From the sequence record MT586120.1: a DNA stretch of 64,000 bases. One strand, 5' to 3'. Under the pieces are notes generated by a model, which was not told where the DNA came from, did no database searches, and saw nothing but the letters and a program-made list of their open reading frames with translations. The position numbers and the translations under genes were made by a program. Positions 5,062 to 60,794 of the stretch are shown here, one piece after another (within the stretch, counting starts at the first letter, position 1; each line of letters starts with the position of its first letter).

Positions 5062-5088
5062 TTAATATACCCAATCATTTTTTGATGC

Positions 5089-5121
5089 CCCCTTCGGAAA
5101 GGGGTTTTTTTATGCTATAAT
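5089..5121 (+). terminator. Intrinsic terminator fused to extended -10 promoter
   Basis: CCCCTT-CGGA-AAGGGG, T7, then A-TGCTATAAT (5113-5121). Confidence 0.7.
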
Positions 5122-20538: not shown

Positions 20539-20655
20539 ATGTTCGGTTTTACTCCTGAAGCAGAAATCCTTAATGCTCGTCTAGCAATGCTAGGTTTCGT
20601 CATCGCAGTCGGAACCTACGCAACTACTGGTCAAATTATCCCCGGCGTATTCTAG
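20539..20655 (+). CDS. hli: High-light inducible protein (38 aa, not in track)
   Basis: MFGFTPEAEILNARLAMLGFVIAVGTYATTGQIIPGVF (ExxNxRxAM motif); GTGCTATAAT at 20501-20510. Confidence 0.95.
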   Translation: MFGFTPEAEILNARLAMLGFVIAVGTYATTGQIIPGVF

Positions 20656-20688
20656 GATACAGTCTAAAAAAAACTAAATAGATATAAT

Positions 20689-30207: not shown

Positions 30208-30366
30208 ATGACCGTTCCACGCAATTACTTAATGAGATATTGTGTGATAGGTTACAAAGACGATAAAAAACGCGAAGAGTTCTTTAATTCAGGTAGAGAT
30301 GCCTGGATTATGGAGAGCTACTTAAAGCGGAATGGTTACCGTGGTGTTAGAATCTCGGTCAAATAA
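30208..30366 (+). CDS. Small hypothetical protein (52 aa, not in track)
   Basis: GGAG before ATG; MTVPRNYLMRYCVIGYKDD... Confidence 0.5.
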   Translation: MTVPRNYLMRYCVIGYKDDKKREEFFNSGRDAWIMESYLKRNGYRGVRISVK

Positions 30367-30372
30367 ATAGAG

Positions 30373-30408
30373 CCTCCCTATGTGGGAGGTTTTTTTATGT
30401 GTTATAAT
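30373..30408 (+). terminator. Intrinsic terminator fused to extended -10 promoter
   Basis: CCTCCC-TATGT-GGGAGG, T7, TGTTATAAT 30400-30408. Confidence 0.7.
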
Positions 30409-46900: not shown

Positions 46901-49577
46901 CACTACTACTAGTGATGTTATCGTTGGCGGTGGACTAACAGTTGTTGGTGATACAACATTCCTAGGAATTGTATCTATTACTGATACATTATTCGTCAAC
47001 CAGGAAATCACTGGTATTGCTACTGTAAACAACCTCAACTTCAATGTTGGTGTTGGTTCTACGTTGTCTGTAGGCTTCCTCACTGCTACTGACCTATATG
47101 TTGCTGGGGTTTCTACCTTCGTTGGTGTAGGCACCTTCCAGAACGACCTATACGTCTCTAAAGACCTCTTTGTTGAGCGTAATATTGTAGCTGCTGCTAT
47201 CTCCGCAGAGAACTACTTTGCTAGTGGCGTATCAACATTCAGTAATACTATTATTGATGGGGCACTTGGCGTTACTAGCTCTGTTGGTATTGCTAAAACT
47301 CTTATTGTTGGTGGTGATGTAGTTGTTGGTGGTGGTATTACTTTTGAGGGTGATATCAATATTGAGGTTGATGTAAATGTAGATGTTGAAGGTAACATCA
47401 ATGCTACTGGAATCTCAACATTCAATGAGTTAGTATTTAATACTGGTATTGGTACTTACCTAGACCTAGAACAACTGGAAGTTGGAATTGCTACATTAGG
47501 TACGGCGAATATCACAACATCATATACTGGTTTTGCTTCTATTACTAACGAAACTGTAGGTCTATCCACAGTAGATGAGCAGAGAGTTGGTATTCTTACC
47601 GTAGGATTTGGTAAGACTGTTGATGATGGAACATTCTTCCGCACTGGAATCGGTACTATCGTTGGCTTTACCACCTATAAGGGTGATGTGTTCATTGATG
47701 GTAACCAGACAATCACGGGTGTATCTAGTTACTCTCAGTTGGATGCAGCACAGTCAAGGATTGGTATTCTAACTGTAAATAACCTACTAGATGCAGACTT
47801 TATATTCTCTTCTGGTCCTCTAGGATTTGCTACACTCAATAACTTTAGTGCAAACCTTGGTATCATAACTGGACTCAATGTTAGTGGAGTTCTAACCGCA
47901 CAGGAACTTGAGGTAGAAGACCTCACAGTAACTAGAAACCTATCGGTTGGTGGAATATCTACTCTAGGTGCCCCTGGTCCTACAGGCTTCACTACGACGC
48001 TTGGTGACCTATATGTTGGTGGTGACCTATTCGTACAGGACGACATCTTCTATGATGAAATCTCTGGTCGCAACCTATCCATCAGTGGTGTTGGTACAAT
48101 CAAAACATTGTATGTAAATACTGGTGTTGTTACTACACTATCAGCAGAAGACTTTGACGCAAACGTTGGTGTTATAACTGACCTACGTGTTGAGAAAGCT
48201 TCTGTCGGTGAGTATATCGGCACTTCAATTACAGCAGAGTTCTTAAAAGTCACTGGAGTATCCACCTTTGAGGGTGTATCTGAATTTGATGAGGATGTAC
48301 TAATTGGCGGTGACTTAAATGTTACTGGAATTATTACTGCTCAGAATGTAGAGGCAGTTGGATTCTTCACAGGTCCTCAGGCATTGATTGGGGAAATCTT
48401 AGCTGAAAAGGCTACAATCACTAATATTATGAACACCAACTTGATGAGTGGTGTTACATCAGTGACTAGTCAGTTGGATGTGATGAATAACTTCCGAGCA
48501 GTCGGAATTTCAACCATCAATACCATCGAGTCTATAAGTATTACAAACTCAGGGATTGTAAGTACTAATACATTAACCGTTGAGAGCTTTGCGGATATTG
48601 AAGACCTTAAAGTTAATGATACATTAACAGTTGATGGTATCGTTAATATAAATGAAGATGTAAATATCAGTAACGGCAACCTGACCATATTAAATGGTAA
48701 TATTGCTGCTGATGACTTAACCATAAGAAATATAATTTCTAGTGGTGTTTCTACATTACCTACATTAAAAAGTACTAATGTAGATATCAATGGTTACTTA
48801 GATGTTCTTGGTATTGCGACTGTTAATTCAGTATTAAACGTTGATGGAGTACTAAATGTTACTAATCAACTATTTGCTAATAGTGGTATTATAACCACAC
48901 TTATTGGTAATCAATTAACATACAACAGTGGAGTAGTTACTTCCTTTACCGTCACTGACAGTCAGATAATTCAGAATGATTTGATTGTTAGTGGTATTAC
49001 CACAACAAAAAACTTAAAGGTTAATGGTGATGCCGAGATAACAAATCTAGATGTGGTTGGATTGGCTACTATAGCTAATGCCGATATAAATCTTGGTGAT
49101 ATACAGACCCTGACGTTCAACTCTGGTGTTGGAACCAGCCTCACCCTTACGAATGGAACTATAACAACAGCAGGAATTACTACTGCTAATATCCAATATG
49201 CTAATATCAATAATGCGGATATTGGTATTGGTACAGTAACTACATTAGATATTGATGATGTTACCCGCCATAGAGCTTACAGATTACAGACATCTTCTAC
49301 CTCACAGGCAGCTATCTTCTCAACAACTGATCTAGAATATCAAACCTATGAGATAACGATCCAGGCAGTTAGTGCTGGTAATATACATAGCACGAAGATC
49401 CTAGCATCACACGATGGTGGTACTGCATACTTCAACGAATACTCAACTGTATTCAATAACATTGAGTTGGGTATCTATGATGTTGTAGTCGGGGGCGGCA
49501 CACTGTCCCTCCTAGTAACACCAGAATCTGCTGCCACAACTACATACACAGCCACGGTTGTCGCTACAAAGGTATAA
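43974..49577 (+). CDS. Long fibre protein (1867 aa)
   Basis: Dense G(I/V)(S/A)T(F/L) and GIGT repeats; C-terminal HSTKILASHDGGTAYFNEY domain typical of cyanophage fibres. Confidence 0.8.
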   Translation: MALFYQSGRVSRFAVGTPGFSTNRDLTLNVSGAIGIETTKPRGSIDTPEISIRGPIIDSGINTGGLGYFLSQDVEGVKWVAASPEDLTFIRVFEDNVQVGVSSFSGLNFISNDSSLFDIKESPIGPNIADINFNTYWIRTEYGNNAGISTGYGPDGTYASLPGYGTSEAVGVTSVGIGTDNPQDDFQVGIGSTGVTINGPEGKLEAEIIKAKNLELDGNITVRSLVVDPGIATFRGNIDAQGISSFTGDVIAGFATIQELYVNDLEVELFRAGVSTLGFGQSASSFTIVENSLEVQGAIGTFINDLYVGNDLYVAGDTFFNQINAENIQVTGIATLNNVEGNTGIFTSFEVTGITTLNQLEFNTGVGTDLQLESSTIGVLTATDVSAGVATIGFANIDDANISGIVTVTEVDVEEIDIERAQVGILTITEGLSVTGTSTFVGLVTVTGDAFIDGDLTVTDQFTVQDLGAENLEVTGIGTIVNLESNVGIITTLFTEGSVNTGVGTFNVVEANDIQSGTGTIGGVGFESGRLEGTELDFDIGRIGILTGDLLSYGIGTFRDRLDSPGISNIAVAIGNTLNYDSTSQINGVTFGDELVDIFNRDLRVTGITTFTGVGTFGSDLYVKEDLFVGGELSFEQLTGTNLQVLGIATVNQLDLNTGIGTFLDLEFLQVGVATITNLLGTISTITRMDSGTVAVTTDPGKYPTSDGQFYADRSFIEFSNALDSRTTDFVARETADIQGTLEVVGLSTFDSDIDVNADINVSGLTTTNFLFAGVGTILLLDTDFIDSDEINAGIITTQDLVVTGSADFQGDVVVDIGGTANITNANIGFASVTEEVVGTSTVGFLSATDANIGVATVGLLSATDAEIEDLEVNTFRAGIATVGFGSFGTDPNEGSLYVTGINTFVGFTTFTGEVYVDGDLTVSGITTFKQLDAEQSQIGILTTKTLLDSNGLIDAENVAISTNLTVSGLTTLTGFTTTSDVIVGGGLTVVGDTTFLGIVSITDTLFVNQEITGIATVNNLNFNVGVGSTLSVGFLTATDLYVAGVSTFVGVGTFQNDLYVSKDLFVERNIVAAAISAENYFASGVSTFSNTIIDGALGVTSSVGIAKTLIVGGDVVVGGGITFEGDINIEVDVNVDVEGNINATGISTFNELVFNTGIGTYLDLEQLEVGIATLGTANITTSYTGFASITNETVGLSTVDEQRVGILTVGFGKTVDDGTFFRTGIGTIVGFTTYKGDVFIDGNQTITGVSSYSQLDAAQSRIGILTVNNLLDADFIFSSGPLGFATLNNFSANLGIITGLNVSGVLTAQELEVEDLTVTRNLSVGGISTLGAPGPTGFTTTLGDLYVGGDLFVQDDIFYDEISGRNLSISGVGTIKTLYVNTGVVTTLSAEDFDANVGVITDLRVEKASVGEYIGTSITAEFLKVTGVSTFEGVSEFDEDVLIGGDLNVTGIITAQNVEAVGFFTGPQALIGEILAEKATITNIMNTNLMSGVTSVTSQLDVMNNFRAVGISTINTIESISITNSGIVSTNTLTVESFADIEDLKVNDTLTVDGIVNINEDVNISNGNLTILNGNIAADDLTIRNIISSGVSTLPTLKSTNVDINGYLDVLGIATVNSVLNVDGVLNVTNQLFANSGIITTLIGNQLTYNSGVVTSFTVTDSQIIQNDLIVSGITTTKNLKVNGDAEITNLDVVGLATIANADINLGDIQTLTFNSGVGTSLTLTNGTITTAGITTANIQYANINNADIGIGTVTTLDIDDVTRHRAYRLQTSSTSQAAIFSTTDLEYQTYEITIQAVSAGNIHSTKILASHDGGTAYFNEYSTVFNNIELGIYDVVVGGGTLSLLVTPESAATTTYTATVVATKV

Positions 49578-49638
49578 TTTATACCGTATAAATACATTCA
49601 TACAATATAATTTTTAATTATAGGGGGAATGTGAACCC

Positions 49639-52600
49639 GTGGCGAATCAGAATTTTCGTGTCAAGAAAGGTTTAGAAGTTGGCTTAGGAGCGACGGCTCT
49701 TTTTGCTGACGATACTGGCGTAGGTATTAATAGTATTACGCCCCGAGGTAATCTTGACGTTAGAGGGCAAGCATATATTGCGGACTTGAAGGTAGGTCCT
49801 GGGTCCATCACTGGGGTTGGGCTTGGGACTACTTCACTGTATGTAGATGGAGATACATTTATAGATGGTGATGTAACAATCACTGGCGACATTATTTTTG
49901 ATGATGCGGTACTAGATGACCTAGTTGTTACTGGTATAGCGTCTCTAAACATAGTATCATTTAACACGGGTGTTGGAACAGCACTTACTGTAACAGATCT
50001 AAATGTAGAAAGCATTAAGATTGATGGGAGCGATTTTGATGTTCTGGATCCAACATTTAATTCAATATCAGTTACTGGTTTCTCCACGTTCGGTGGTCTG
50101 AATACCACTGGATTCTCTACATTCTATCAGAACTTAAGAGTAGAACAAGACCTAAAAGTAGGTGGTAATATTGACCTAGAAGATCTAGGTGCTGGTAATA
50201 TTTCTGTAGCGGGTACAGTAACTACCAATGGTCTAGAATTTAATGTAGGTATTGGTACTTCACTATCACTAGAAAAGATTAGTGTAGAAAATATTGAGAT
50301 TGACGGAAGTGACTTTGATGTTCTAGATCCTACATTTGAGTCCCTATCAGTTACTGGTTTCTCCACGTTTGGTGGTCTGAATACTACTGGAGTCTCTACG
50401 TTCTATCAGAATGTACGTATTGATAAGGATTTGGAAGTCGGTGGGAACATCTCACTTGATGATCTTGACTCTGGTAATATCAGTGTCGGTGGTACTATCA
50501 CCACAAACAGCCTAATATTCAACGTTGGTATTGGTACTACTGCCCAGTTTGAAGACCTAATTGTAACTGGAATCTCCAGCCTTCAAACTATCACTGGCTT
50601 TGGTTCTGATCTACAGTTCCTACCAGCTGGGTCTATTAGTACCTCTGTTGGTATTGGTTCAACCATTCCCCCCACTCTGCGACCGACAGGGGAACCCGTC
50701 CAAGCTGGTGATCTATGGTTTGATGCTCAAGATTTAAGACAGTACACATACTATGTTGATCCTAATGGTGACGCACAGTGGGTAGATTCTAACCCACCCC
50801 CAACTCAACCTTCTCTACGATTCATTGGAGATGATTCAGAGATTGGTGAAGTTGATATTCAAAATTCAATCTTTAGCATTACTGGTAAAGAGAATCAGAT
50901 ATTAACAGATGTTATTCCCAATACACCCAACATTGAAGTTGGACTATCCACTAATGTTACTATTGATGGTAGCCTATCAGTAGGAACCACAGCATTCTTT
51001 GGTGATTCTGTTGCTATTGGTAACACCCTATTCGTAACTAGTGATGTAGTTATTGGTGGTGGTATCACATTCCAGGGTGATATTACTGTAGAAATTGATA
51101 CCGAACTAATAGGTAACGTTAATGTCCTAGGTATCGCAACATTCAATGAGCTTAACTTTGACGTTGGCGTAGGAAATACACTTACATTAGAAGACCTCAA
51201 TGTTAATGGGACTATCAATGCTAATGGAGCTGGTGTTGCTACTATTGGTGGCTCACCATCCTTTGAGAACCTAACTGTTACTGGGATTACTACACTAGGA
51301 TTTACCACAGTTCAAGGTAACTTGAATGTTACTGGTGACTTAATTGTCGGTGATGATATTGTATTTGATGAAGCCACTCTAAGGAACATCAATGTTTCTG
51401 GCTTATCATCTCTAAATTCAGTAGGTTATAATGTTGGTATTGGTAGTACCTTAACTATTGAGAAAAAGCTTACTGTAGAAGGATACACTGATCTAAAAGG
51501 TGAAGTAAGAGTTGGTGGAGCGTCAACATTTGTTGGGTTTGCAACATTCCAAGATGGATTATCTGTTCTAGGCAACCTTAATGTTACTGGTGATATTGTC
51601 TCTAGTGATGCAACTTATGGAGACCTAACGGTAACAAATACATTAACATCAGACAATAATTTACAGGGTAATATAGGTAACTTCAAAGAACTAACAGTAA
51701 CTGATGATTTCAAATCCAATGGAACAGCTACTTTATTTACAGTAGGTGTTCAGACAGTATCTATCTCAACCGAATTATCTGTTAGTGGTTTAACTACACT
51801 CACTGGAGAATTTGAATTTAATGAGGCTGAAGGTTATGAACTAACAGTAGAGAAGCTCAACGTAAATGCTGATGGTGAGGTTAATCTTCCTGGTGTTGCC
51901 TTTACAAATAAGGATGCAGTATTCCCCAACCTAGAAGTGATTGGGGTATCTACATTCAAGGGATTCGTGGATGTCAATTCTGATGTTGATATCTCAGGCA
52001 TTACGACTATAGGGACAAATATTAAAATCGATGGTGGTGCTAGAAGAATTGATGTAGGTGGTTCATTTATCCAGGGTGCTAGTGCAATCCCATTCCAGGA
52101 AGCTGAAGTTTCATCTGGTAAAGCTACATTTACAAGATTAATTGTAACTAATAATTCAGATGAATCAACATTTGCTGGTGATGTTGAAATTACAGGTGAA
52201 CTTCAGGTTAGTTCAGCAAGTACCTTTGCATCTATTACTGCACAATCAATTGATTCTATTGGTAGCGTAGATATTGGAGACAATCTAACAGTAGATAACA
52301 ACCTAGAAGTTAAGGAAAGAACTGACCTTAAAGATCTATATGTAAGTGGTATTGCTTCACTAAACGGTGCTAGTTTTGGTGATGGTGGTGAAGCTACCTT
52401 CGAGAAGATCAATGTAACTGGTCTATCATCACTCACATCAGTAAGTGTATCAGAGACCCTTGGGGTTAGTGGTCTAACCACTATGACTGACTTAAATGTT
52501 AGTGGTGTAGCAACAATTGGTCTAACATCAACAACTAACCTACAATTTACTAATGGGGATGGTTATGAACTAGAAGTTTACAGCCTCACAGTTCCTACTG

Positions 52601-53763
52601 GTGGTTTTGTAAGCCTTCCAGGAATTCCAGTCAGTGACGGTGGAGCACAATTCTCCGAACTTAAAGTCACTGGAGTATCGACATTCTCTGGTATCGCAAC
52701 ATTCTCTGATAGCATTTATGTAAATGGTGACCTGGTTGTAGAAGGCAACCAAGTATTCTCTGGTATTAGTGGAGAAGACATTAATGTTACTGGTATTCTT
52801 ACTACACAAAGTTTTAATGTTGGTGGGGCATCAACGTTCGTTGGTGTTGGTACTTTCCAAAACGATCTGTATGTAGCTGATGATCTATTCGTCAAGAGGG
52901 ATCTCTTGGTGGGTGGTGCTGCAACCGTAGGTACTCTAACTGCAACCGATGCACGTTTCCAAAACGTAATTGTTGACGGCAACCTTACAGGAGCCAGTGA
53001 TGGTTCAGCCATTATTATTGATGGTGGTTCAGTAATTAGTGGTATTGTAACTATTGGACCAGCTTCAATTACATTGAATGGTCTTCCAGGACAAGAAATA
53101 ATTGAAATTGGAACTGGTAGTGGAAATGTTATTGCTGGTCTCAATACATTTACAAATGACCCATCCCACGTCAAGGTTGATGAGGGAAGATTCAATACAT
53201 TTATTACTGTATCGGGTGCGGGTTCTACTTCAACCTTCGAGGGTGATTTAGATGTTGAGGGGGACATTACTGTAAAGGGTAGTCAAGTATTTGAAGGTGG
53301 CGCACAGGCACAAGACTTTAATGTTAGTGGTATTACTACAACAGAAAACTTGAAAGTTAATAGTGAATCAACTTTCGCAGGTGTTGGTACTTTCCAAGAC
53401 AATTTGTTTGTTGCTGATGATCTATTCGTAGCAAGAAATGCGAATATTGTAGGTATTATTACTGCCCAAGATCTTAATTCTACATCTGATAGAAGGGTCA
53501 AAGAGAACATTAAGCCCATTGATGATGCCCTCAATAAAGTAACTCAACTTAATGGTATTACATTTAGCTTTATTAATACTGGTACAAAGTCTGCTGGTGT
53601 TATTGCACAGGAAGTTGAGGCAGTATTCCCCGATATGGTCAAGGGAGATTTCCCCAAGTCTGTTAACTACAATGGATTGATCGGTGCTCTTATTGAATCC
53701 GTTAAGGAGCTTAAGGAGCAGAACGAGGAGCTACGAAGTCGAATAGAAAAGTTGGAATCTTAA
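49639..53763 (+). CDS. Tail fibre with C-terminal peptidase S74 intramolecular chaperone
   Basis: GTG start, MANQNFRVKKGLEVG; 93-aa internal duplication (about 50017 and 50296); SDRRVKENI...GVIAQEVE...VNYNGLIG. Confidence 0.85.
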   Translation: MANQNFRVKKGLEVGLGATALFADDTGVGINSITPRGNLDVRGQAYIADLKVGPGSITGVGLGTTSLYVDGDTFIDGDVTITGDIIFDDAVLDDLVVTGIASLNIVSFNTGVGTALTVTDLNVESIKIDGSDFDVLDPTFNSISVTGFSTFGGLNTTGFSTFYQNLRVEQDLKVGGNIDLEDLGAGNISVAGTVTTNGLEFNVGIGTSLSLEKISVENIEIDGSDFDVLDPTFESLSVTGFSTFGGLNTTGVSTFYQNVRIDKDLEVGGNISLDDLDSGNISVGGTITTNSLIFNVGIGTTAQFEDLIVTGISSLQTITGFGSDLQFLPAGSISTSVGIGSTIPPTLRPTGEPVQAGDLWFDAQDLRQYTYYVDPNGDAQWVDSNPPPTQPSLRFIGDDSEIGEVDIQNSIFSITGKENQILTDVIPNTPNIEVGLSTNVTIDGSLSVGTTAFFGDSVAIGNTLFVTSDVVIGGGITFQGDITVEIDTELIGNVNVLGIATFNELNFDVGVGNTLTLEDLNVNGTINANGAGVATIGGSPSFENLTVTGITTLGFTTVQGNLNVTGDLIVGDDIVFDEATLRNINVSGLSSLNSVGYNVGIGSTLTIEKKLTVEGYTDLKGEVRVGGASTFVGFATFQDGLSVLGNLNVTGDIVSSDATYGDLTVTNTLTSDNNLQGNIGNFKELTVTDDFKSNGTATLFTVGVQTVSISTELSVSGLTTLTGEFEFNEAEGYELTVEKLNVNADGEVNLPGVAFTNKDAVFPNLEVIGVSTFKGFVDVNSDVDISGITTIGTNIKIDGGARRIDVGGSFIQGASAIPFQEAEVSSGKATFTRLIVTNNSDESTFAGDVEITGELQVSSASTFASITAQSIDSIGSVDIGDNLTVDNNLEVKERTDLKDLYVSGIASLNGASFGDGGEATFEKINVTGLSSLTSVSVSETLGVSGLTTMTDLNVSGVATIGLTSTTNLQFTNGDGYELEVYSLTVPTGGFVSLPGIPVSDGGAQFSELKVTGVSTFSGIATFSDSIYVNGDLVVEGNQVFSGISGEDINVTGILTTQSFNVGGASTFVGVGTFQNDLYVADDLFVKRDLLVGGAATVGTLTATDARFQNVIVDGNLTGASDGSAIIIDGGSVISGIVTIGPASITLNGLPGQEIIEIGTGSGNVIAGLNTFTNDPSHVKVDEGRFNTFITVSGAGSTSTFEGDLDVEGDITVKGSQVFEGGAQAQDFNVSGITTTENLKVNSESTFAGVGTFQDNLFVADDLFVARNANIVGIITAQDLNSTSDRRVKENIKPIDDALNKVTQLNGITFSFINTGTKSAGVIAQEVEAVFPDMVKGDFPKSVNYNGLIGALIESVKELKEQNEELRSRIEKLES

Positions 53764-53781
53764 GTTGGATAAATAGTAATT

Positions 53782-53805
53782 AAGGCTATACTATAGCCTT
53801 TTTTT
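53782..53805 (+). terminator. Intrinsic terminator
   Basis: AAGGCTATA-C-TATAGCCTT plus T-run. Confidence 0.7.
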
Positions 53806-53846
53806 GCGCGTACAAGAAGACTATAAACTAAGAGGAAAAAAAACTA

Positions 53847-55916
53847 ATGGCATACCAAATTAAAGGTGGTGTTATTATTAATGACGATAGAGCCCTTATT
53901 GGCGTTAGTACTGCTGGTATTAACACCGCTCTATACGTTGGTGATTCAGTCGCTAATCTAATAACATTAGACGGCGAAACGGGTAATATAGATGTAAGTG
54001 GAACTTCAACCTTAGATGGTGACGTTACACTTGGTGGAAATCTCAGCTTTGTTGGCGCAACTGCTGGCGAATCTGTAAATGGAATTACAACTGATATTAG
54101 TGTAAGTGCTAGTGCTACTGATCTAGTAACAGCAGAAGGCATTAGGACATATGTTGTAGATCAGATTGCTGAAACTGGAGGAACTCTAAACTTCGGTGGT
54201 GATAGTGGATCTGGTGCTGTTGATCTAAGCAGCCAAACTTTCTCAATTGAAGGTACTAACCTAGAAATTGAGACTTCTGCGGTCAACCAGACTCTAACAA
54301 TCGGTCTAACCAACGAGGTTGCTATTGCCGGTTCTATGACCGCAAATAAGTACTACGGTGATGGCTCTGAACTAACAGGCATTACTGGTAGTAACGTTAA
54401 TCTAGATGGTACTGATCAGTCATTCAATAGCTTAGTAATTACTGAGACTGTTGGTTATGGATTGACTGTTGATAATGATGCCCAGATCAAGGGCAACCTA
54501 GTAATGGTTGGGCAGATCCACGGTCCTTCCGAGTTTGTTATTGACCCAGAAGTAATTGGGAACAATACTGGTACTGTTATTATTAGGGGTGACCTAGTTG
54601 TAGAAGGTACTGAATTCATTATTAATTCAGACACACTACAAATTGCTGATAAGCAAATTGGTCTAGCAACAAATGTTACCAATGCTGCTCTATTAGAAGA
54701 TTCTGGTATCACCATCGGTGAGCCTGGATCCGCTGTTGAGCAATCATTCTTGTGGGACTTCTCATCCCAGTCATTCCAGTCATCCGCTGGTCTTGGCGTA
54801 ACTGATGGTGGTGGATTCTATGCTGGGGATACTGAAATCCTATCATTAGAAACCTTAGGTTCCACGGTAGTCAACTCATCACTAACAAGTGTTGGTACTC
54901 TAACTGACCTAACTGTTACTGGTGATATCAATGCTAACGGTGATATCGTTGGTGATAATTTTACTAATATCTCCGGTATTAATAGTGTAACTGCTACTGA
55001 TTTCTATGGTAATGGTGCTGGTCTAACTGGTATTAATGCTGGTTCAGTTAATCTAGATGGAACTGATCAGAACTTCAGAAGCTTGCAGCTATCTGGTGTT
55101 GGTGTTGCTCTAACAGTAACCAACGATGCTGAGATTGGTAATAATCTAACTGTTGATGGAGACATCACATTAGGTGGAGATATTCTACCAGATTCCCCAG
55201 GCACTGGTTCCGTTGGAAAAACAACTGATCGTTTCCTTGTCGTTGCTGCTACTGGCGGTGACTTCACACAAGCCGATATCGGTTCGGTTAATGTTTCAGG
55301 AGTATCCACTCTAACTGGCAATGTTGAACTAGGGGCACAGCTAACCTTCACTGGTAGTGACGCTGATGAGTTCGTTTCTGGTATCACAACCAGTCTCGAT
55401 GAGTCCGCTGGTGCCAATGAGATTGCAACTGCTGAAGGCATCAAGGACTATGTTGATGCTCAGATTGGTGGTGGTGGTTCTGTCCAGGCAGCAACAATCG
55501 CAGTTGCTGATAACCAGGATAACGTAGAATATTCAGTGCCTTTCGCTAGTGCTACTGCTGCTAATGCAAGTCTATATTCAGACTCAACCCAACTTAAGTA
55601 CAATCCTTCAACTGGTCTTCTAGTTGCACAGGATTTCAACTCACTCTCCGACATCCGCTTTAAGGATAACGTAGAGACCATTGACGGTGCAGTAGCCAAG
55701 CTACAGCAACTACGTGGTGTTGAGTTCGATTGGAAGCACTCACCAGGTTCATCTGTTGGTGTTATCGCTCAAGAGGTTAAGGAGGTTTATCCTCAACTAG
55801 TAACCGAAGGCGAAGAGAAGATCACTGTTAACTATAACGGTTTGGTTGGTCTACTCATTCAGGCTGTTAAGGAACAGGCTGATGAAATCGCTGCTCTAAA
55901 AGAGAAGCTAGGTTGA
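53847..55916 (+). CDS. Tail fibre with C-terminal S74 chaperone
   Basis: SDIRFKDNV...GVIAQEVKE...VNYNGLVG. Confidence 0.85.
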   Translation: MAYQIKGGVIINDDRALIGVSTAGINTALYVGDSVANLITLDGETGNIDVSGTSTLDGDVTLGGNLSFVGATAGESVNGITTDISVSASATDLVTAEGIRTYVVDQIAETGGTLNFGGDSGSGAVDLSSQTFSIEGTNLEIETSAVNQTLTIGLTNEVAIAGSMTANKYYGDGSELTGITGSNVNLDGTDQSFNSLVITETVGYGLTVDNDAQIKGNLVMVGQIHGPSEFVIDPEVIGNNTGTVIIRGDLVVEGTEFIINSDTLQIADKQIGLATNVTNAALLEDSGITIGEPGSAVEQSFLWDFSSQSFQSSAGLGVTDGGGFYAGDTEILSLETLGSTVVNSSLTSVGTLTDLTVTGDINANGDIVGDNFTNISGINSVTATDFYGNGAGLTGINAGSVNLDGTDQNFRSLQLSGVGVALTVTNDAEIGNNLTVDGDITLGGDILPDSPGTGSVGKTTDRFLVVAATGGDFTQADIGSVNVSGVSTLTGNVELGAQLTFTGSDADEFVSGITTSLDESAGANEIATAEGIKDYVDAQIGGGGSVQAATIAVADNQDNVEYSVPFASATAANASLYSDSTQLKYNPSTGLLVAQDFNSLSDIRFKDNVETIDGAVAKLQQLRGVEFDWKHSPGSSVGVIAQEVKEVYPQLVTEGEEKITVNYNGLVGLLIQAVKEQADEIAALKEKLG

Positions 55917-58788: not shown

Positions 58789-58923
58789 ATGCTAGCAGTA
58801 TATCGTGGTGTCGCTTATGACACAGATCGTAACTTAACGAAAGAAGCAGATTACAAAAAAGTAACTGAAACTTATCGTGGTATTCAGCACACCGAAACCG
58901 TTAAGGTAGAGGTATCAAAATGA
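58789..58923 (+). CDS. DUF4278-like peptide (44 aa, not in track)
   Basis: AGGAG SD; MLAVYRGVAYDTD...TYRGIQH (two YRG motifs). Confidence 0.8.
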   Translation: MLAVYRGVAYDTDRNLTKEADYKKVTETYRGIQHTETVKVEVSK

Positions 58924-59024
58924 ATACACTAGACATCATCCGTCAAAAAGAGCTAAAAGCAAGAAAGCTTCACGAAGCTCGGTTGCTTATGGCAAGACTA
59001 AATCAAAGAGCGAATAACGCTTGA
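58920..59024 (+). CDS. Small conserved peptide (34 aa, not in track)
   Basis: ATGA coupling; MNTLDIIRQKELKARKLHEARLL. Confidence 0.6.
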   Translation: MNTLDIIRQKELKARKLHEARLLMARLNQRANNA

Positions 59025-59030
59025 TACTAG

Positions 59031-59054
59031 GAGCCGCAAGGCTCCTTTTTTATG
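59031..59054 (+). repeat. 24-nt direct repeat, copy 1 (terminator with GCAA loop)
   Basis: GAGCCGCAAGGCTCCTTTTTTATG, identical to 59803-59826. Confidence 0.9.
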
Positions 59055-59084
59055 ACTAAATAGTAATATCATATTCTTTTTATT

Positions 59085-59795
59085 ATGAGTAGTCTTAATA
59101 CTAATTTTATTAATAATACAACTAGAACTACTGCTAATAATAGTGAAAAAAATCTTCAGCTAGGTTCTGATGGAAGTGTGACTAGTTTTGAGGGTCTTAG
59201 TATTAGTGATGCGGCTGCTTCTAATGGTTTGAATTATATAGAACAATGGAGTGGTTCAAATTATGATAAATTTTATTCTTTCGATAGGAGTAAATTTAAT
59301 AAGTTTACTGTTAGTGGTTGGGTTGATCTTCCAGGAGAATCAGCAAACAACACCGGAATAGGTCTTTTTATTCAGCCATGTATTAGTTCAGTCCCATACA
59401 CACTAAGTCAGTTAAATGGGGGCTTCCCAACGTCATGGCAACAGCCAAATCAAGCTGGTGGTGTTGTGTCTTTTTCCGCCGATCAAATGGTATATAATAC
59501 AGCTGCCACACCAGCAGCAGTTGCATACCGATGGATTTTTGAGCTTGAAATTATTTTTAATGATAAAATTATATGGTCTATTGTTAGTCCTTCTACATTT
59601 ATAGATTATAATGTTATTCCTAATACAACGTTATCAGTTGTTAGACAGTTAACAGCGCAAAATTGGGATACAACATTAGGTAACCAAATTGACACTTTTA
59701 GAATACTAACGAATTCCCTTACATCTACATCCCTTTGTAGGGGTGAATTGGGGGTAAAAATAAGTAGGGATACGAGTTTTTCAAATTACACATAA
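59085..59795 (+). CDS. Hypothetical beta-rich protein in a repeat-flanked cassette
   Basis: 236 aa, AT-rich atypical codon usage, own CTAAATA at 59056-59062. Confidence 0.7.
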   Translation: MSSLNTNFINNTTRTTANNSEKNLQLGSDGSVTSFEGLSISDAAASNGLNYIEQWSGSNYDKFYSFDRSKFNKFTVSGWVDLPGESANNTGIGLFIQPCISSVPYTLSQLNGGFPTSWQQPNQAGGVVSFSADQMVYNTAATPAAVAYRWIFELEIIFNDKIIWSIVSPSTFIDYNVIPNTTLSVVRQLTAQNWDTTLGNQIDTFRILTNSLTSTSLCRGELGVKISRDTSFSNYT

Positions 59796-59802
59796 TCACT
59801 AT

Positions 59803-59826
59803 GAGCCGCAAGGCTCCTTTTTTATG
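59803..59826 (+). repeat. 24-nt direct repeat, copy 2 (terminator fused to TGCTATAAT)
   Basis: Identical to 59031-59054; continues into TGCTATAAT 59825-59833. Confidence 0.9.
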
Positions 59827-59853
59827 CTATAATACCCTTGAATACATAATACT

Positions 59854-60045
59854 ATGGACCGAGACAAGGTAAAGTTCTTAATTCAATCAATTGAAGTTCT
59901 TATTGAAGAACTAAAAGCAGAGGTCTACACCGACTCCGAGACCCATAAGGTTTCCGAGACTGCTTATAGCGACGAGGAGGAACCAATTTCCACCGATGAT
60001 CTAATCCAAACAATGTTCAACCAAGTGATTGACGATACACTATGA
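59854..60045 (+). CDS. Conserved cyanophage hypothetical protein
   Basis: MDRDKVKFLIQSIEVLIEELKAEVY. Confidence 0.7.
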   Translation: MDRDKVKFLIQSIEVLIEELKAEVYTDSETHKVSETAYSDEEEPISTDDLIQTMFNQVIDDTL

Positions 60046-60794
60046 AACCAGTAAAAGCCGCAGACCTACTCCGCCTTGACCCACTACAAAAGGTAGAGAT
60101 GCTTCGCAACACCCCCAATCCACAACAAATGGTTTATATGGGTGGTAAGAATGATTACAGTGAGCTTCCAATTGAAGATACCACCATTCCTTTTGAGAAA
60201 GACGCTGGTGAATGGGTAATCAAACAGCTTCTAGCAAATGAGCGAGGACATTGGGGTCCATTAGAGCACCCAGCAATCTCATTCAGTTGCTCTGGTTTCG
60301 TACATAACGTAATTGTTCAGGCACGTACTCATCGTGTAGGTATTAGCTTTGATGTTCAATCACAACGTTATACCTGTAAGCGTGTTCTCAAAGTAGCATC
60401 AGGCGAGCTTCTGCCCCAGAAGGTCTTCTATGTACGCCCTCCTGGCTTCTACACCAACCGAAAGGGTAAGAAGTATGAATGGACCCCTGATGACTATGAG
60501 ACCCAGCTAGGGCTCTGTCGGGCTGCCTCACAGCGCTTCGCTACACAGTTTGAGAATGGCGTATCAGAAGAGCACGCTAGGGACTATCTTCCCCAGAACA
60601 TCCGTCAAAACTTCGTGGTTACATTCAGTCTCCGCGCACTACTTCACTTCCTTGATCTACGAGCCAAGCTTGACGCACAGCTAGAAATCCAGGCACTATG
60701 TGAAGCAATGGTTGAGCCAACAAAGGTATGGGTTCCCCAGATCTTTGAGTATTATGAAGAGAAGCGTCTCCACAGAGCGCGTCTTGCCCCCTAA
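60042..60794 (+). CDS. thyX: FAD-dependent thymidylate synthase
   Basis: HWGPLEH, QARTHR...SFDVQSQRY, ARDYLPQ, LRALLHFLDLR...AQLEI. Confidence 0.9.
   Translation: MKPVKAADLLRLDPLQKVEMLRNTPNPQQMVYMGGKNDYSELPIEDTTIPFEKDAGEWVIKQLLANERGHWGPLEHPAISFSCSGFVHNVIVQARTHRVGISFDVQSQRYTCKRVLKVASGELLPQKVFYVRPPGFYTNRKGKKYEWTPDDYETQLGLCRAASQRFATQFENGVSEEHARDYLPQNIRQNFVVTFSLRALLHFLDLRAKLDAQLEIQALCEAMVEPTKVWVPQIFEYYEEKRLHRARLAP

What the first reader, a model, noticed from the sequence alone, without database searches (positions are those of the whole stretch)
59031..59833. Foreign-looking gene cassette flanked by exact 24-nt terminator repeats
Seen: GAGCCGCAAGGCTCCTTTTTTATG at 59031 and 59803. Copy 1 continues into ACTAAATA (late box), copy 2 into CTATAAT. 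Removing one repeat plus the interval restores a single terminator-promoter unit. The 236-aa ORF is AT-rich, beta-rich and unrecognised. Inference: a moron inserted, and excisable, by recombination at the terminator with no integrase; possibly a receptor-binding or decoration domain.
Basis: partly seen in the sequence, partly recalled or inferred. Interest (0 to 1): 0.65.

Follow-up and report, generated by a model that had tools for sequence, protein, structure and literature searches.

The report
Swappable gene slot in a cyanophage
In the marine cyanophage S-CAM7, a short terminator-plus-promoter unit just upstream of thyX acts as a gene slot that is empty, holds one or two copies of a fast-evolving lectin-like late gene, or holds an unrelated gene, depending on the isolate. 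This is a cyanophage example of the "PeSL" cassette shuffling already known from T4-like coliphages.

Summary
The window is Synechococcus phage S-CAM7 isolate 0809CC03. An exact 24-nt terminator repeat (59031 and 59803, 772 bp apart) brackets a 236-aa ORF of low GC.

The predicted empty site exists. Isolate 0910SB42 (KU686213) has one hairpin followed by TGCTATAAT at exactly this place, as do at least 6 metagenomic relatives. Isolate 0910CC49 carries an unrelated 176-aa ORF there, flanked by a duplicated promoter segment. More distant relatives carry one or two tandem paralogues of the 236-aa gene, always in this slot.

On trees built from the flanking DNA, the slot's content changes 6-7 times among 14 loci, as often as shuffled labels would. 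Two loci with identical flanks differ in content.

This matches the PeSL (promoter-early stem-loop) cassette mechanism of T4-like phages, here with a late-promoter variant. No report of it in cyanophages was found in the papers searched.

The gene is not foreign. It belongs to a small family resident at this slot. The family has a conserved N-terminus, a ConA/galectin-like beta-sandwich (moderate-confidence model) and an excess of amino-acid changes in its central part. A virion glycan-binding role is plausible but unproven.

The parts
58789..58923 (+). 44-aa ORF (DUF4278-like, phrog_5049), a conserved left-flank gene
   Evidence: conserved in all related loci
58920..59024 (+). 34-aa ORF, the last gene before the slot; its stop lies 6 nt before the repeat
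59029..59046 (+). Terminator hairpin, copy 1 (7-bp stem, GCAA loop), followed by T6
   Evidence: -13.3 kcal/mol, z -3.5
59031..59054 (+). 24-nt direct repeat, copy 1
59055..59062 (+). Late-promoter-like box ACTAAATA (cyanophage NATAAATA type), 21 nt before the ATG
   Evidence: motif as described in PMC2984593. The same box with the same spacing precedes every copy of the family in relatives
59085..59795 (+). 236-aa cassette gene (QLF86315.1). It has a conserved N-terminus (residues ~21-47) and a ConA/galectin-like beta-sandwich, with variable segments at residues 123-134, 139-147, 159-161 and 175-180
59803..59826 (+). 24-nt direct repeat, copy 2 (hairpin with a 5-bp stem, then T6)
59825..59833 (+). 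Extended -10 promoter TGCTATAAT of the downstream 63-aa ORF/thyX unit. No -35 match was seen
   Evidence: identical in the empty-site alleles
59854..60045 (+). 63-aa ORF (phrog_2848), the first gene after the slot
60042..60794 (+). thyX (Thy1), a conserved right-flank gene

Best explanation
The intergenic unit 'terminator hairpin, T-run, promoter' lies between the 34-aa ORF and the 63-aa ORF/thyX operon of Mazuvirus (S-CAM7-like) cyanophages. It acts as a recombination slot of the PeSL type. In this isolate the slot holds one module made of a late-promoter box, a 236-aa gene and a hairpin, so the hairpin and T-run (24 nt) occur twice.

Short-homology recombination or replication slippage between the two copies, carried out by the phage's own T4-type recombination and replication machinery, would delete the 772-bp interval and leave exactly the empty allele seen in other isolates. 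The reverse reaction, or exchange with a co-infecting relative, would fill or re-fill the slot. Crossovers at different points of the unit explain the different junctions: in the hairpin and T-run for the lectin-like module, and in the T-run and -10 box for the 176-aa module.

What is shown:
- the repeat;
- the four natural states of the slot (empty; one copy; two copies; the unrelated 176-aa gene);
- their rapid turnover relative to divergence of the flanks.

What is inferred:
- the recombination mechanism and any circular intermediate;
- late transcription from the CTAAATA box;
- the gene product being a virion-associated, glycan-binding host-interaction protein, anchored by its conserved N-terminus and diversifying in the central part of a lectin-like beta-sandwich.

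My confidence is about 0.75 for the slot mechanism and about 0.35-0.4 for the function.
For: Identity and states of the slot:
- The window is 100% identical to MT586120 (S-CAM7 0809CC03).
- Three S-CAM7 isolates with 98-99.9% identical flanks show three states. One has the 236-aa gene. One has an unrelated 176-aa ORF flanked by a duplicated promoter segment, CTTTTTATGCTATAATA. One is an exact empty site.
- In the survey of the slot, at least 6 distinct metagenomic loci are empty (gap of 59-72 nt). L130 and L131 hold one copy. L004-L008 and the L128/L129 type hold two tandem paralogues. L132, from a Tara contig, holds the 176-aa family at the same site with the same promoter duplication.
- Every copy of the family is preceded by the same hairpin, a T-run and an NTAAATA box.
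- Degraded junctions exist. Some keep GAG plus the T-run with the hairpin core missing, and others lack the left arm of the hairpin. Degraded '1/2 PeSLs' have been described.

Turnover:
- Flank trees need 6-7 changes of state among 14 loci, against a shuffled mean of 6.6. L132 (176-aa gene) and L136 (empty) have identical flanks.

Precedent:
- The PeSL mechanism, including experimentally shown mini-circles, is described in PMC2839356 and PMC4122927.
- Two other hairpin, T-run, TG(C/T)TATAAT units occur in the window.
- A distant homologue (P0020) is itself flanked by a 20-nt promoter repeat.

Function:
- NTAAATA boxes lie 18-40 nt upstream of many + strand genes, including the fibre genes.
- The alignment of 14 members has 53 invariant columns.
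- The AF2 model has pLDDT 71.6 and pTM 0.69 and is all-beta.
- Its matches are galectins, legume lectins, the GH16 and GH32 beta-sandwiches, the phage J-1 Dit CBM2 and an adenovirus fibre galectin domain, at Z 6-7.5.
- Predicted viral structures that match include tail-fibre, collagen and minor-tail proteins, at TM 0.4-0.49.
- Counts of nonsynonymous:synonymous differences are 23:29 in codons 1-48 and 85.5:9.5 in codons 116-195, pooled over three close pairs. The excess of nonsynonymous changes has P = 0.001, and Fisher's test for the contrast gives 6e-9.
Against: - No reads, circle junction or deletion junction within a lysate could be examined, so recombination at the repeat is inferred from comparing alleles only.
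- The hairpin is conserved in all lineages and is a generic terminator, found once each in more than 100 unrelated viral contigs. The 24-nt identity could therefore be kept by selection for function rather than reflect a recent crossover.
- Unlike classical PeSLs, the promoter has no -35 element, and the left unit carries a late box rather than an early promoter.
- Only three such composite units with different hairpins occur in 64 kb, and none of the others coincides with an indel among the three isolates.
- The family has never been seen at another genomic site, so movement between sites is not shown.
- Function: fold matches are middling (best Z 7.5, Foldseek TM 0.26 against PDB). There are no sequence matches to known lectins, no expression or virion data, and no oligomer test. 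The dN/dS estimates come from few short pairs by a simple counting method in an AT-rich gene.
Confidence: 0.72

Rival explanations
1. The slot holds a resident tandem gene family whose copy number changes by unequal crossing-over. On this view the ancestral state is one or two copies. The window's single copy and the empty alleles are successive deletions between the repeated upstream units (hairpin, late box, conserved 5' end). Nothing was ever inserted. This overlaps with the best explanation and differs mainly in direction and in denying cassette import.
For: Every member for which neighbouring sequence was recovered lies in this slot. In two-copy loci the repeat extends from the hairpin through the late box into the conserved N-terminal codons. 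The deeper-branching lineages (L004, L005, L130, L131) are occupied. The profile search of 1.84 billion representative proteins found no donor family elsewhere.
Against: Within the clade of 9 loci that contains S-CAM7, 6 are empty and the occupied ones are scattered singly, which by parsimony favours gains. The unrelated 176-aa family occupies the same slot in two separate flank lineages, so import into the slot does occur. The window's allele matches neither copy of the closest two-copy locus, at 69% and 60% identity.
Confidence: 0.3
2. The polymorphism is shuffled by ordinary homologous recombination in the long conserved flanking genes during co-infection of related phages (allelic replacement). 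The two hairpins are simply two functional terminators kept alike by selection, and they play no special part in recombination.
For: Flanks are 97-100% identical among phages that carry very different slot contents. That gives kilobases of homology, far better than 24 nt. T4-like phages recombine at high rates (established knowledge). The hairpin sequence is a convergent generic terminator.
Against: This cannot create the states in the first place. The empty allele corresponds base for base to a crossover inside the 24-nt repeat. The 176-aa module is bounded by a different duplicated piece of the same unit. Degraded half-hairpins sit exactly at module borders. A distant homologue in another context is again bounded by a duplicated promoter.
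Confidence: 0.25
3. The cassette moves by an enzyme-driven mechanism: site-specific recombination at the hairpin (integron attC-like) or homing by an endonuclease.
For: Hairpin-bounded single-gene cassettes resemble integron cassettes superficially. A NUMOD4 endonuclease-like insertion exists elsewhere in a sister isolate.
Against: The modules contain no integrase or endonuclease gene: each holds a single ORF with no Pfam, PHROG or NCBIfam hit. The junctions vary in position within the unit, unlike site-specific cuts. The whole genome could not be scanned for an integrase.
Confidence: 0.03
4. The repeat is a chance match or an assembly artefact, and the ORF is not a real gene.
For: None beyond the low GC and the orphan status in the phage databases.
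Against: Shuffles expect 0 matches. The same architecture appears in independent isolates and metagenome assemblies. There are 15 homologues with 53 invariant columns, and the N-terminus is under purifying selection.
Confidence: 0.01

Closest known systems
PeSL (promoter-early stem-loop) cassettes of T4-like phages RB49/phi1, PST/T4 and nt-1/KVP40 (Arbiol et al. 2010, PMC2839356; Comeau et al. 2014, PMC4122927)
   Same: Both are composite terminator-hairpin plus promoter units in intergenic spaces of a T4-like myovirus, and they flank single ORFan genes. Close relatives differ by precise presence, absence or replacement of the ORF, leaving one unit. Crossover points vary within the unit, and degraded half-units are found at module borders. 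No dedicated recombinase is involved. Both lie in a variable region next to adaptive genes.
   Different: The host is a marine cyanobacterium and the phage family is Kyanoviridae. The promoter is an extended -10 type (TGCTATAAT) without a recognisable -35. The unit in front of the cassette gene carries a late-type NTAAATA box instead of an early promoter, comparable to the 'PmSL' middle-promoter variant of nt-1. The hairpin sequence is private to this one slot rather than one of a dense array of similar units. Mini-circles have not been shown here.
Morons of lambdoid phages
   Same: A single accessory gene with its own promoter and terminator, lying between two conserved genes, with lower GC than its surroundings, and absent from close relatives.
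   Different: Classical morons are expressed from the prophage and are thought to be acquired from outside. This is a lytic T4-like phage, the promoter looks late, and the gene family is resident at one slot.
Integron gene cassettes
   Same: One landing site, many alternative single-gene cassettes, and hairpin-forming boundaries.
   Different: There is no integrase and no attC/attI structure. The boundaries are transcription signals and the junctions are variable.
Concanavalin A-like lectin/glucanase beta-sandwich domains, including the phage J-1 Dit CBM2 (5ly8) and the adenovirus fibre galectin domain (2wsu)
   Same: The predicted all-beta jelly-roll sandwich of residues ~42-233 aligns to galectins, legume lectins and the GH16/GH32 beta-sandwich domains (Z 6-7.5, 105-148 residues aligned). 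Such domains serve as carbohydrate-binding modules on phage and virus fibres.
   Different: No sequence similarity was detected, the Z-scores are middling, no sugar-binding residues were identified, and the conserved ~45-residue N-terminal extension has no counterpart.

Membership tests
PeSL-type mobile regulatory cassette | Stem-loop (terminator) directly upstream of a promoter in an intergenic space | tested here: met
   A hairpin plus T6, then TGCTATAAT at 59803-59833. A hairpin plus T6, then ACTAAATA at 59029-59062.
PeSL-type mobile regulatory cassette | The promoter is a sigma-70-like early promoter with -35 and -10 boxes | tested here: inconclusive
   The right unit has an extended -10 (TGnTATAAT) but only 2 of 6 matches at the -35 position, and the promoter scan did not call it. 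The left unit has a late-type box instead. Promoter activity was not measured.
PeSL-type mobile regulatory cassette | The units flank ORFs that are inserted, deleted or replaced between very close relatives, leaving a single unit in the empty genome | tested here: met
   Three states occur among S-CAM7 isolates, and four among relatives.
PeSL-type mobile regulatory cassette | Many similar units are clustered in hyperplastic regions of the genome | tested here: not met
   Only three hairpin, T-run, TG(C/T)TATAAT units occur in 64 kb, each with a different hairpin. The 24-nt sequence occurs only at this slot. The other 157 kb of the genome was not examined.
PeSL-type mobile regulatory cassette | Recombination between flanking units forms mini-circles (shown by inverse PCR) | not testable with these tools
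Moron | An autonomous module (own promoter, gene, own terminator) between conserved genes, absent in relatives, with deviant composition | tested here: met
   (GC 34.6% against 41.5%)
Moron | Acquired from outside the phage lineage | tested here: not met
   Apart from the context-less 186-aa homologue on a 998-bp contig, every relative for which neighbouring sequence was recovered lies in this slot of Mazuvirus-like phages. No other homologue was found among 1.84 billion representatives.
ConA-like lectin/glucanase superfamily | Two-sheet jelly-roll beta-sandwich fold | tested here: inconclusive
   The AF2 model has pLDDT 71.6. The top 50 structural matches are nearly all of this superfamily, but the best Z is 7.5 and the Foldseek TM is 0.26 against PDB.
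ConA-like lectin/glucanase superfamily | Carbohydrate binding | not testable with these tools
   This needs a glycan array or a binding assay.
Phage receptor-binding or decoration protein | Present in the virion and affects adsorption or host range | not tested
   The support is indirect only: a late box, neighbouring fibre genes, a conserved N-terminus with a variable centre, and predicted viral structures of fibre proteins among the matches.

The most novel reading that the evidence does not exclude
The slot is a population-level, integrase-free 'cassette exchanger' of cyanophages. Alleles of a late-expressed, virion-borne lectin-like adhesin (0, 1 or 2 copies, with a central segment under diversifying selection) and alternative early genes are swapped at a terminator-promoter unit. 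This changes which Synechococcus surface glycans or strains the phage can use. If so, composite transcription signals act as the general currency of gene flux in marine T4-like phages.
Probability: 0.2. Interest if true: 0.7.

Novelty: new member of a known kind. Interest (0 to 1): 0.5.

Why it matters
T4-like cyanophages are major agents of mortality for marine Synechococcus and Prochlorococcus, and how their flexible genes are gained and lost is poorly understood. The one cyanophage paper in the searched library that considered PeSLs rejected them for its own case (PMC4503421).

Here a single slot shows four natural states, with base-precise junctions, in cultured isolates that infect the same laboratory host (WH7803). 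That makes the mechanism directly testable by lysate sequencing or inverse PCR. The phenotype of a fast-evolving lectin-like late gene is testable too, by comparing adsorption and host range between natural near-isogenic phages.

The work also names a small uncharacterised protein family that is a reasonable candidate for a host-recognition accessory. The advance is incremental for phage biology in general, because the mechanism is already known from coliphages and vibriophages.

Tried and rejected
- Whole genome: none is held for this window, so only the last 64 kb of S-CAM7 and the matching parts of two sister isolates were compared.
No test of empty-site reads or circle junctions was possible, and read laying was not used.
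- The same repeat around other genes: negative. There are only two copies in the window. In IMG/VR the 20-nt hairpin pattern hits more than 114 contigs, but always once per locus. About 100 are unrelated phages that use it as an ordinary terminator, and the Mazuvirus-like hits are this same slot.
- Sequence-based function: Pfam, PHROGs, NCBIfam, PADLOC, a PDB sequence profile and the ESM Atlas gave nothing usable.
- Profile search of 1.84 billion proteins: it found only the family itself and one 186-aa distant homologue. The hits to proteins of more than 1000 aa are WD40 or cadherin repeat proteins, and I judge them spurious.
- No paralogue elsewhere in the window, and no shared N-terminal motif with the fibre genes.
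- Structure of the alternative 176-aa protein: pLDDT 36.5, unusable.
- Variable segments of the 236-aa protein: overall, loops are not more variable than strands (P = 0.41). Only four particular segments in the C-terminal half are hypervariable.
- Supplementary tables of the 2026 S-CAM7 coevolution preprint, which might list a deletion at this locus, are not held.
- Earlier notes of this scan near this place concern the giant fibre genes and did not bear on this finding.

Full report
**Identity and observation**

The window is 100% identical to Synechococcus phage S-CAM7 isolate 0809CC03 (MT586120.1), a T4-like cyanomyovirus of the Kyanoviridae, genus Mazuvirus. It is the last 64 kb of that record.

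There is no third match even with three mismatches, and shuffles expect none. The copies lie 772 bp apart.

Each copy holds a GCAA-tetraloop hairpin followed by six T. Copy 1 has a 7-bp stem (-13.3 kcal/mol) and copy 2 a 5-bp stem (-8.7 kcal/mol). Copy 1 continues into ACTAAATA and copy 2 into the extended -10 box TGCTATAAT.

Between the copies lies one ORF, 59085-59795, of 236 aa. Its GC is 34.6% against 41.5% for the window, in the lowest 2% of windows of that size.

**The empty site and the other states**

Three other S-CAM7 records match the flanks but not the interval.

- In isolate 0910SB42 (KU686213) the site is empty. It has one hairpin, seven T, then ATGCTATAAT and the 63-aa ORF. This is the sequence obtained by deleting one repeat plus the interval from the window.
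- In isolate 0910CC49 (KU686212, also NC_031927) the slot holds a different, unrelated 176-aa ORF. Its module is bounded by a duplication of the T-run plus -10 part of the unit rather than by a duplicated hairpin.

A word-based protein search found 15 relatives of the 236-aa protein, all 222-237 aa long and 49-69% identical, all from metagenomes. Wherever neighbouring sequence was recovered, the gene lies in this same slot, between the 34-aa ORF and the 63-aa ORF/thyX.

- One copy: L130 and L131.
- Two tandem paralogues: L004, L005-L008, and a JGI contig with 235-aa and 233-aa genes followed by the start of the downstream ORF. L128 and L129 are short fragments of the same type.

Each copy is preceded by the same hairpin, a T-run and an NTAAATA box about 20 nt before the ATG. 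Some borders carry degraded units. In some, GAG plus the T-run remains with the hairpin core gone; in others the left arm of the hairpin is missing.

The 176-aa family is also found in this slot, on a 74-kb Tara contig, with the same promoter duplication.

Searching IMG/VR with the downstream 63-aa protein and with the hairpin pattern gave at least 6 distinct further loci, all empty. One fragment carried the start of the lectin-like gene.

**Turnover**

I built maximum-likelihood trees of the flanking DNA for 14 loci, using the left flank, the right flank, and both together. Explaining the four states needs 6-7 changes, where the minimum possible is 3. Randomly shuffled labels need 6.6 on average, so the state is not inherited with the flanks.

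L132 (176-aa gene) and L136 (empty) have identical flanks. The three S-CAM7 isolates differ by about 1% or less in the flanks and show three states.

Metagenomic fragments whose left flank is 97-98% identical to the window carry alleles only 67-69% identical in protein. The window's allele matches neither copy of the nearest two-copy locus.

The direction of the event in the window's lineage cannot be decided. Empties dominate its clade, which favours gain. Deeper lineages are occupied, which favours an old resident family.

**Mechanism and the closest known system**

The anatomy matches the PeSL (promoter-early stem-loop) cassettes of T4-like phages. These are composite terminator/promoter units that flank ORFans which are inserted, deleted or replaced between close relatives. 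Crossovers occur at variable points in the unit, degraded half-units are found, and mini-circles have been demonstrated experimentally. A middle-promoter variant is also known (PMC2839356 and PMC4122927).

The differences here are these:
- The promoter is an extended -10 type without a -35.
- The unit in front of the cassette gene has a late-type box.
- The hairpin is private to this slot.
- Only three composite units of this design occur in 64 kb, and the other two are not indel sites among the three isolates.

In the searched library, the only cyanophage paper that mentions PeSLs considered them for S-PM2 and rejected them (PMC4503421).

A 2026 preprint reports that S-CAM7 strains frequently lose variable regions by deletion during experimental evolution (10.64898/2026.10.08.757702). 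Its tables were not available to check this locus.

The hairpin by itself is not a mobile repeat. It is a generic terminator found once each in more than 100 unrelated viral contigs.

**The gene product**

The family is real. An alignment of 14 members has 53 invariant columns, and residues ~21-47 are almost invariant. No Pfam, PHROG, NCBIfam, PADLOC, PDB-sequence or Atlas assignment was obtained.

A profile search of 1.84 billion representative proteins found only the family and one 186-aa distant homologue. That homologue lacks the N-terminal segment (34% identity, hhalign probability 99.4). It is itself bounded by a 20-nt direct repeat containing TGCTATAAT. The WD40 and cadherin hits are spurious.

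The AlphaFold model (pLDDT 71.6, pTM 0.69) is an all-beta sandwich with a disordered N-terminus.

- Foldseek against PDB lists legume lectins first (E 2e-4, but TM only 0.26).
- An independent all-against-all structural search gives galectins, the GH32 and GH16 beta-sandwiches, legume lectins, the CBM2 of phage J-1 Dit and an adenovirus fibre galectin domain, at Z 6-7.5.
- Predicted viral structures that match (TM 0.4-0.49) include tail-fibre, collagen-repeat and minor-tail proteins.

These scores are middling. The fold call (ConA/galectin-like jelly roll) is probable but not certain.

The NTAAATA box matches the cyanophage late-promoter motif (PMC2984593). In this window it lies 18-40 nt upstream of many + strand genes, including the fibre genes.

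The slot lies at the border between the fibre gene cluster and the thyX/phoH/gp33/gp59 cluster. The fibre cluster includes Peptidase_S74-bearing proteins just upstream.

Nei-Gojobori counts on close allele pairs give dN/dS of 0.1-0.34 for codons 1-48. For codons 116-195 the values are 1.3-4.2. Pooled over three gene pairs, that segment has 85.5 nonsynonymous and 9.5 synonymous differences (P = 0.001 for an excess), against 23 and 29 in the N-terminus (Fisher 6e-9).

The four most variable segments (residues 123-134, 139-147, 159-161, 175-180) are inter-strand segments in the model, although loops as a class are not more variable than strands.

Taken together this is the pattern of a host-interaction protein with a conserved anchor and a diversifying binding domain. 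The evidence is indirect, and I put a virion glycan-binding role at about 0.35-0.4.

**Verdict**

The cassette and empty-site idea is right and is the known PeSL mechanism.
- 'Foreign' is wrong, because the family is resident at this slot.
- Direction and excision are unproven.
- The functional guess is plausible but untested.
- Novelty: a new member of a known kind, that is, a cyanophage PeSL-like slot with a late-promoter variant and an uncharacterised lectin-like family.
- Interest is moderate (0.5), mainly because cultured near-isogenic isolates make both the mechanism and the phenotype directly testable.

Noticed in passing
window 47339-54803: Sister isolates lack large parts of the fibre-like giant genes. 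KU686212 lacks window 47355-51076 and KU686213 lacks 47339-54803. The junctions lie at short coding repeats of the GTTGGTGGTGGTAT type, which suggests recombination between internal repeats of the fibre genes.
   Followed up: partly
window ~20651-20657 (L011:28640-29043 in KU686213): KU686213 carries a ~390-bp insertion encoding a NUMOD4 homing-endonuclease-like ORF that is absent from the window. The insert brings its own CTAAATA box, hairpin and T-run, and CTAAATA lies on both sides of it.
   Followed up: partly
window ~5080-5121 and ~30365-30408: Two more composite units of the same design (GC-rich hairpin, T7, A or ATG, then TG(C/T)TATAAT). The second is followed 17 nt later by a CTAAATA box. 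Neither is an indel site among the three S-CAM7 isolates.
   Followed up: partly
L001:2593-3123 (KU686212) and L132:4001-4516: The alternative occupant of the slot is a 171-180-aa ORFan family with very low GC (29%). It sits behind the early-type promoter and has no family or fold assignment (AF2 pLDDT 36.5). Only three cluster representatives are known.
   Followed up: partly
L138:1-700: A distant 186-aa homologue of the lectin-like family, lacking the conserved N-terminus, lies on a 998-bp metagenomic contig. It is flanked by an exact 20-nt direct repeat, ATGTGCTATAATGCTATGAG.
   Followed up: partly
window 59052-59063 versus 59824-59835: After the shared ATG, the late box and the -10 box are near-copies of each other (ATGACTAAATAG versus ATGCTATAATAC). 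One or two small changes could switch the unit between the late type and the sigma-70 type.
   Followed up: no
IMG/VR loci L013-L126: The hairpin GAGCCGCAAGGCTC plus a T-run recurs as a single-copy terminator in more than 100 viral contigs of very different GC (31-61%) and context. One large group has a conserved downstream ribosome-binding site and start codon. This looks like convergent or widely shared use of one GNRA-loop terminator.
   Followed up: no
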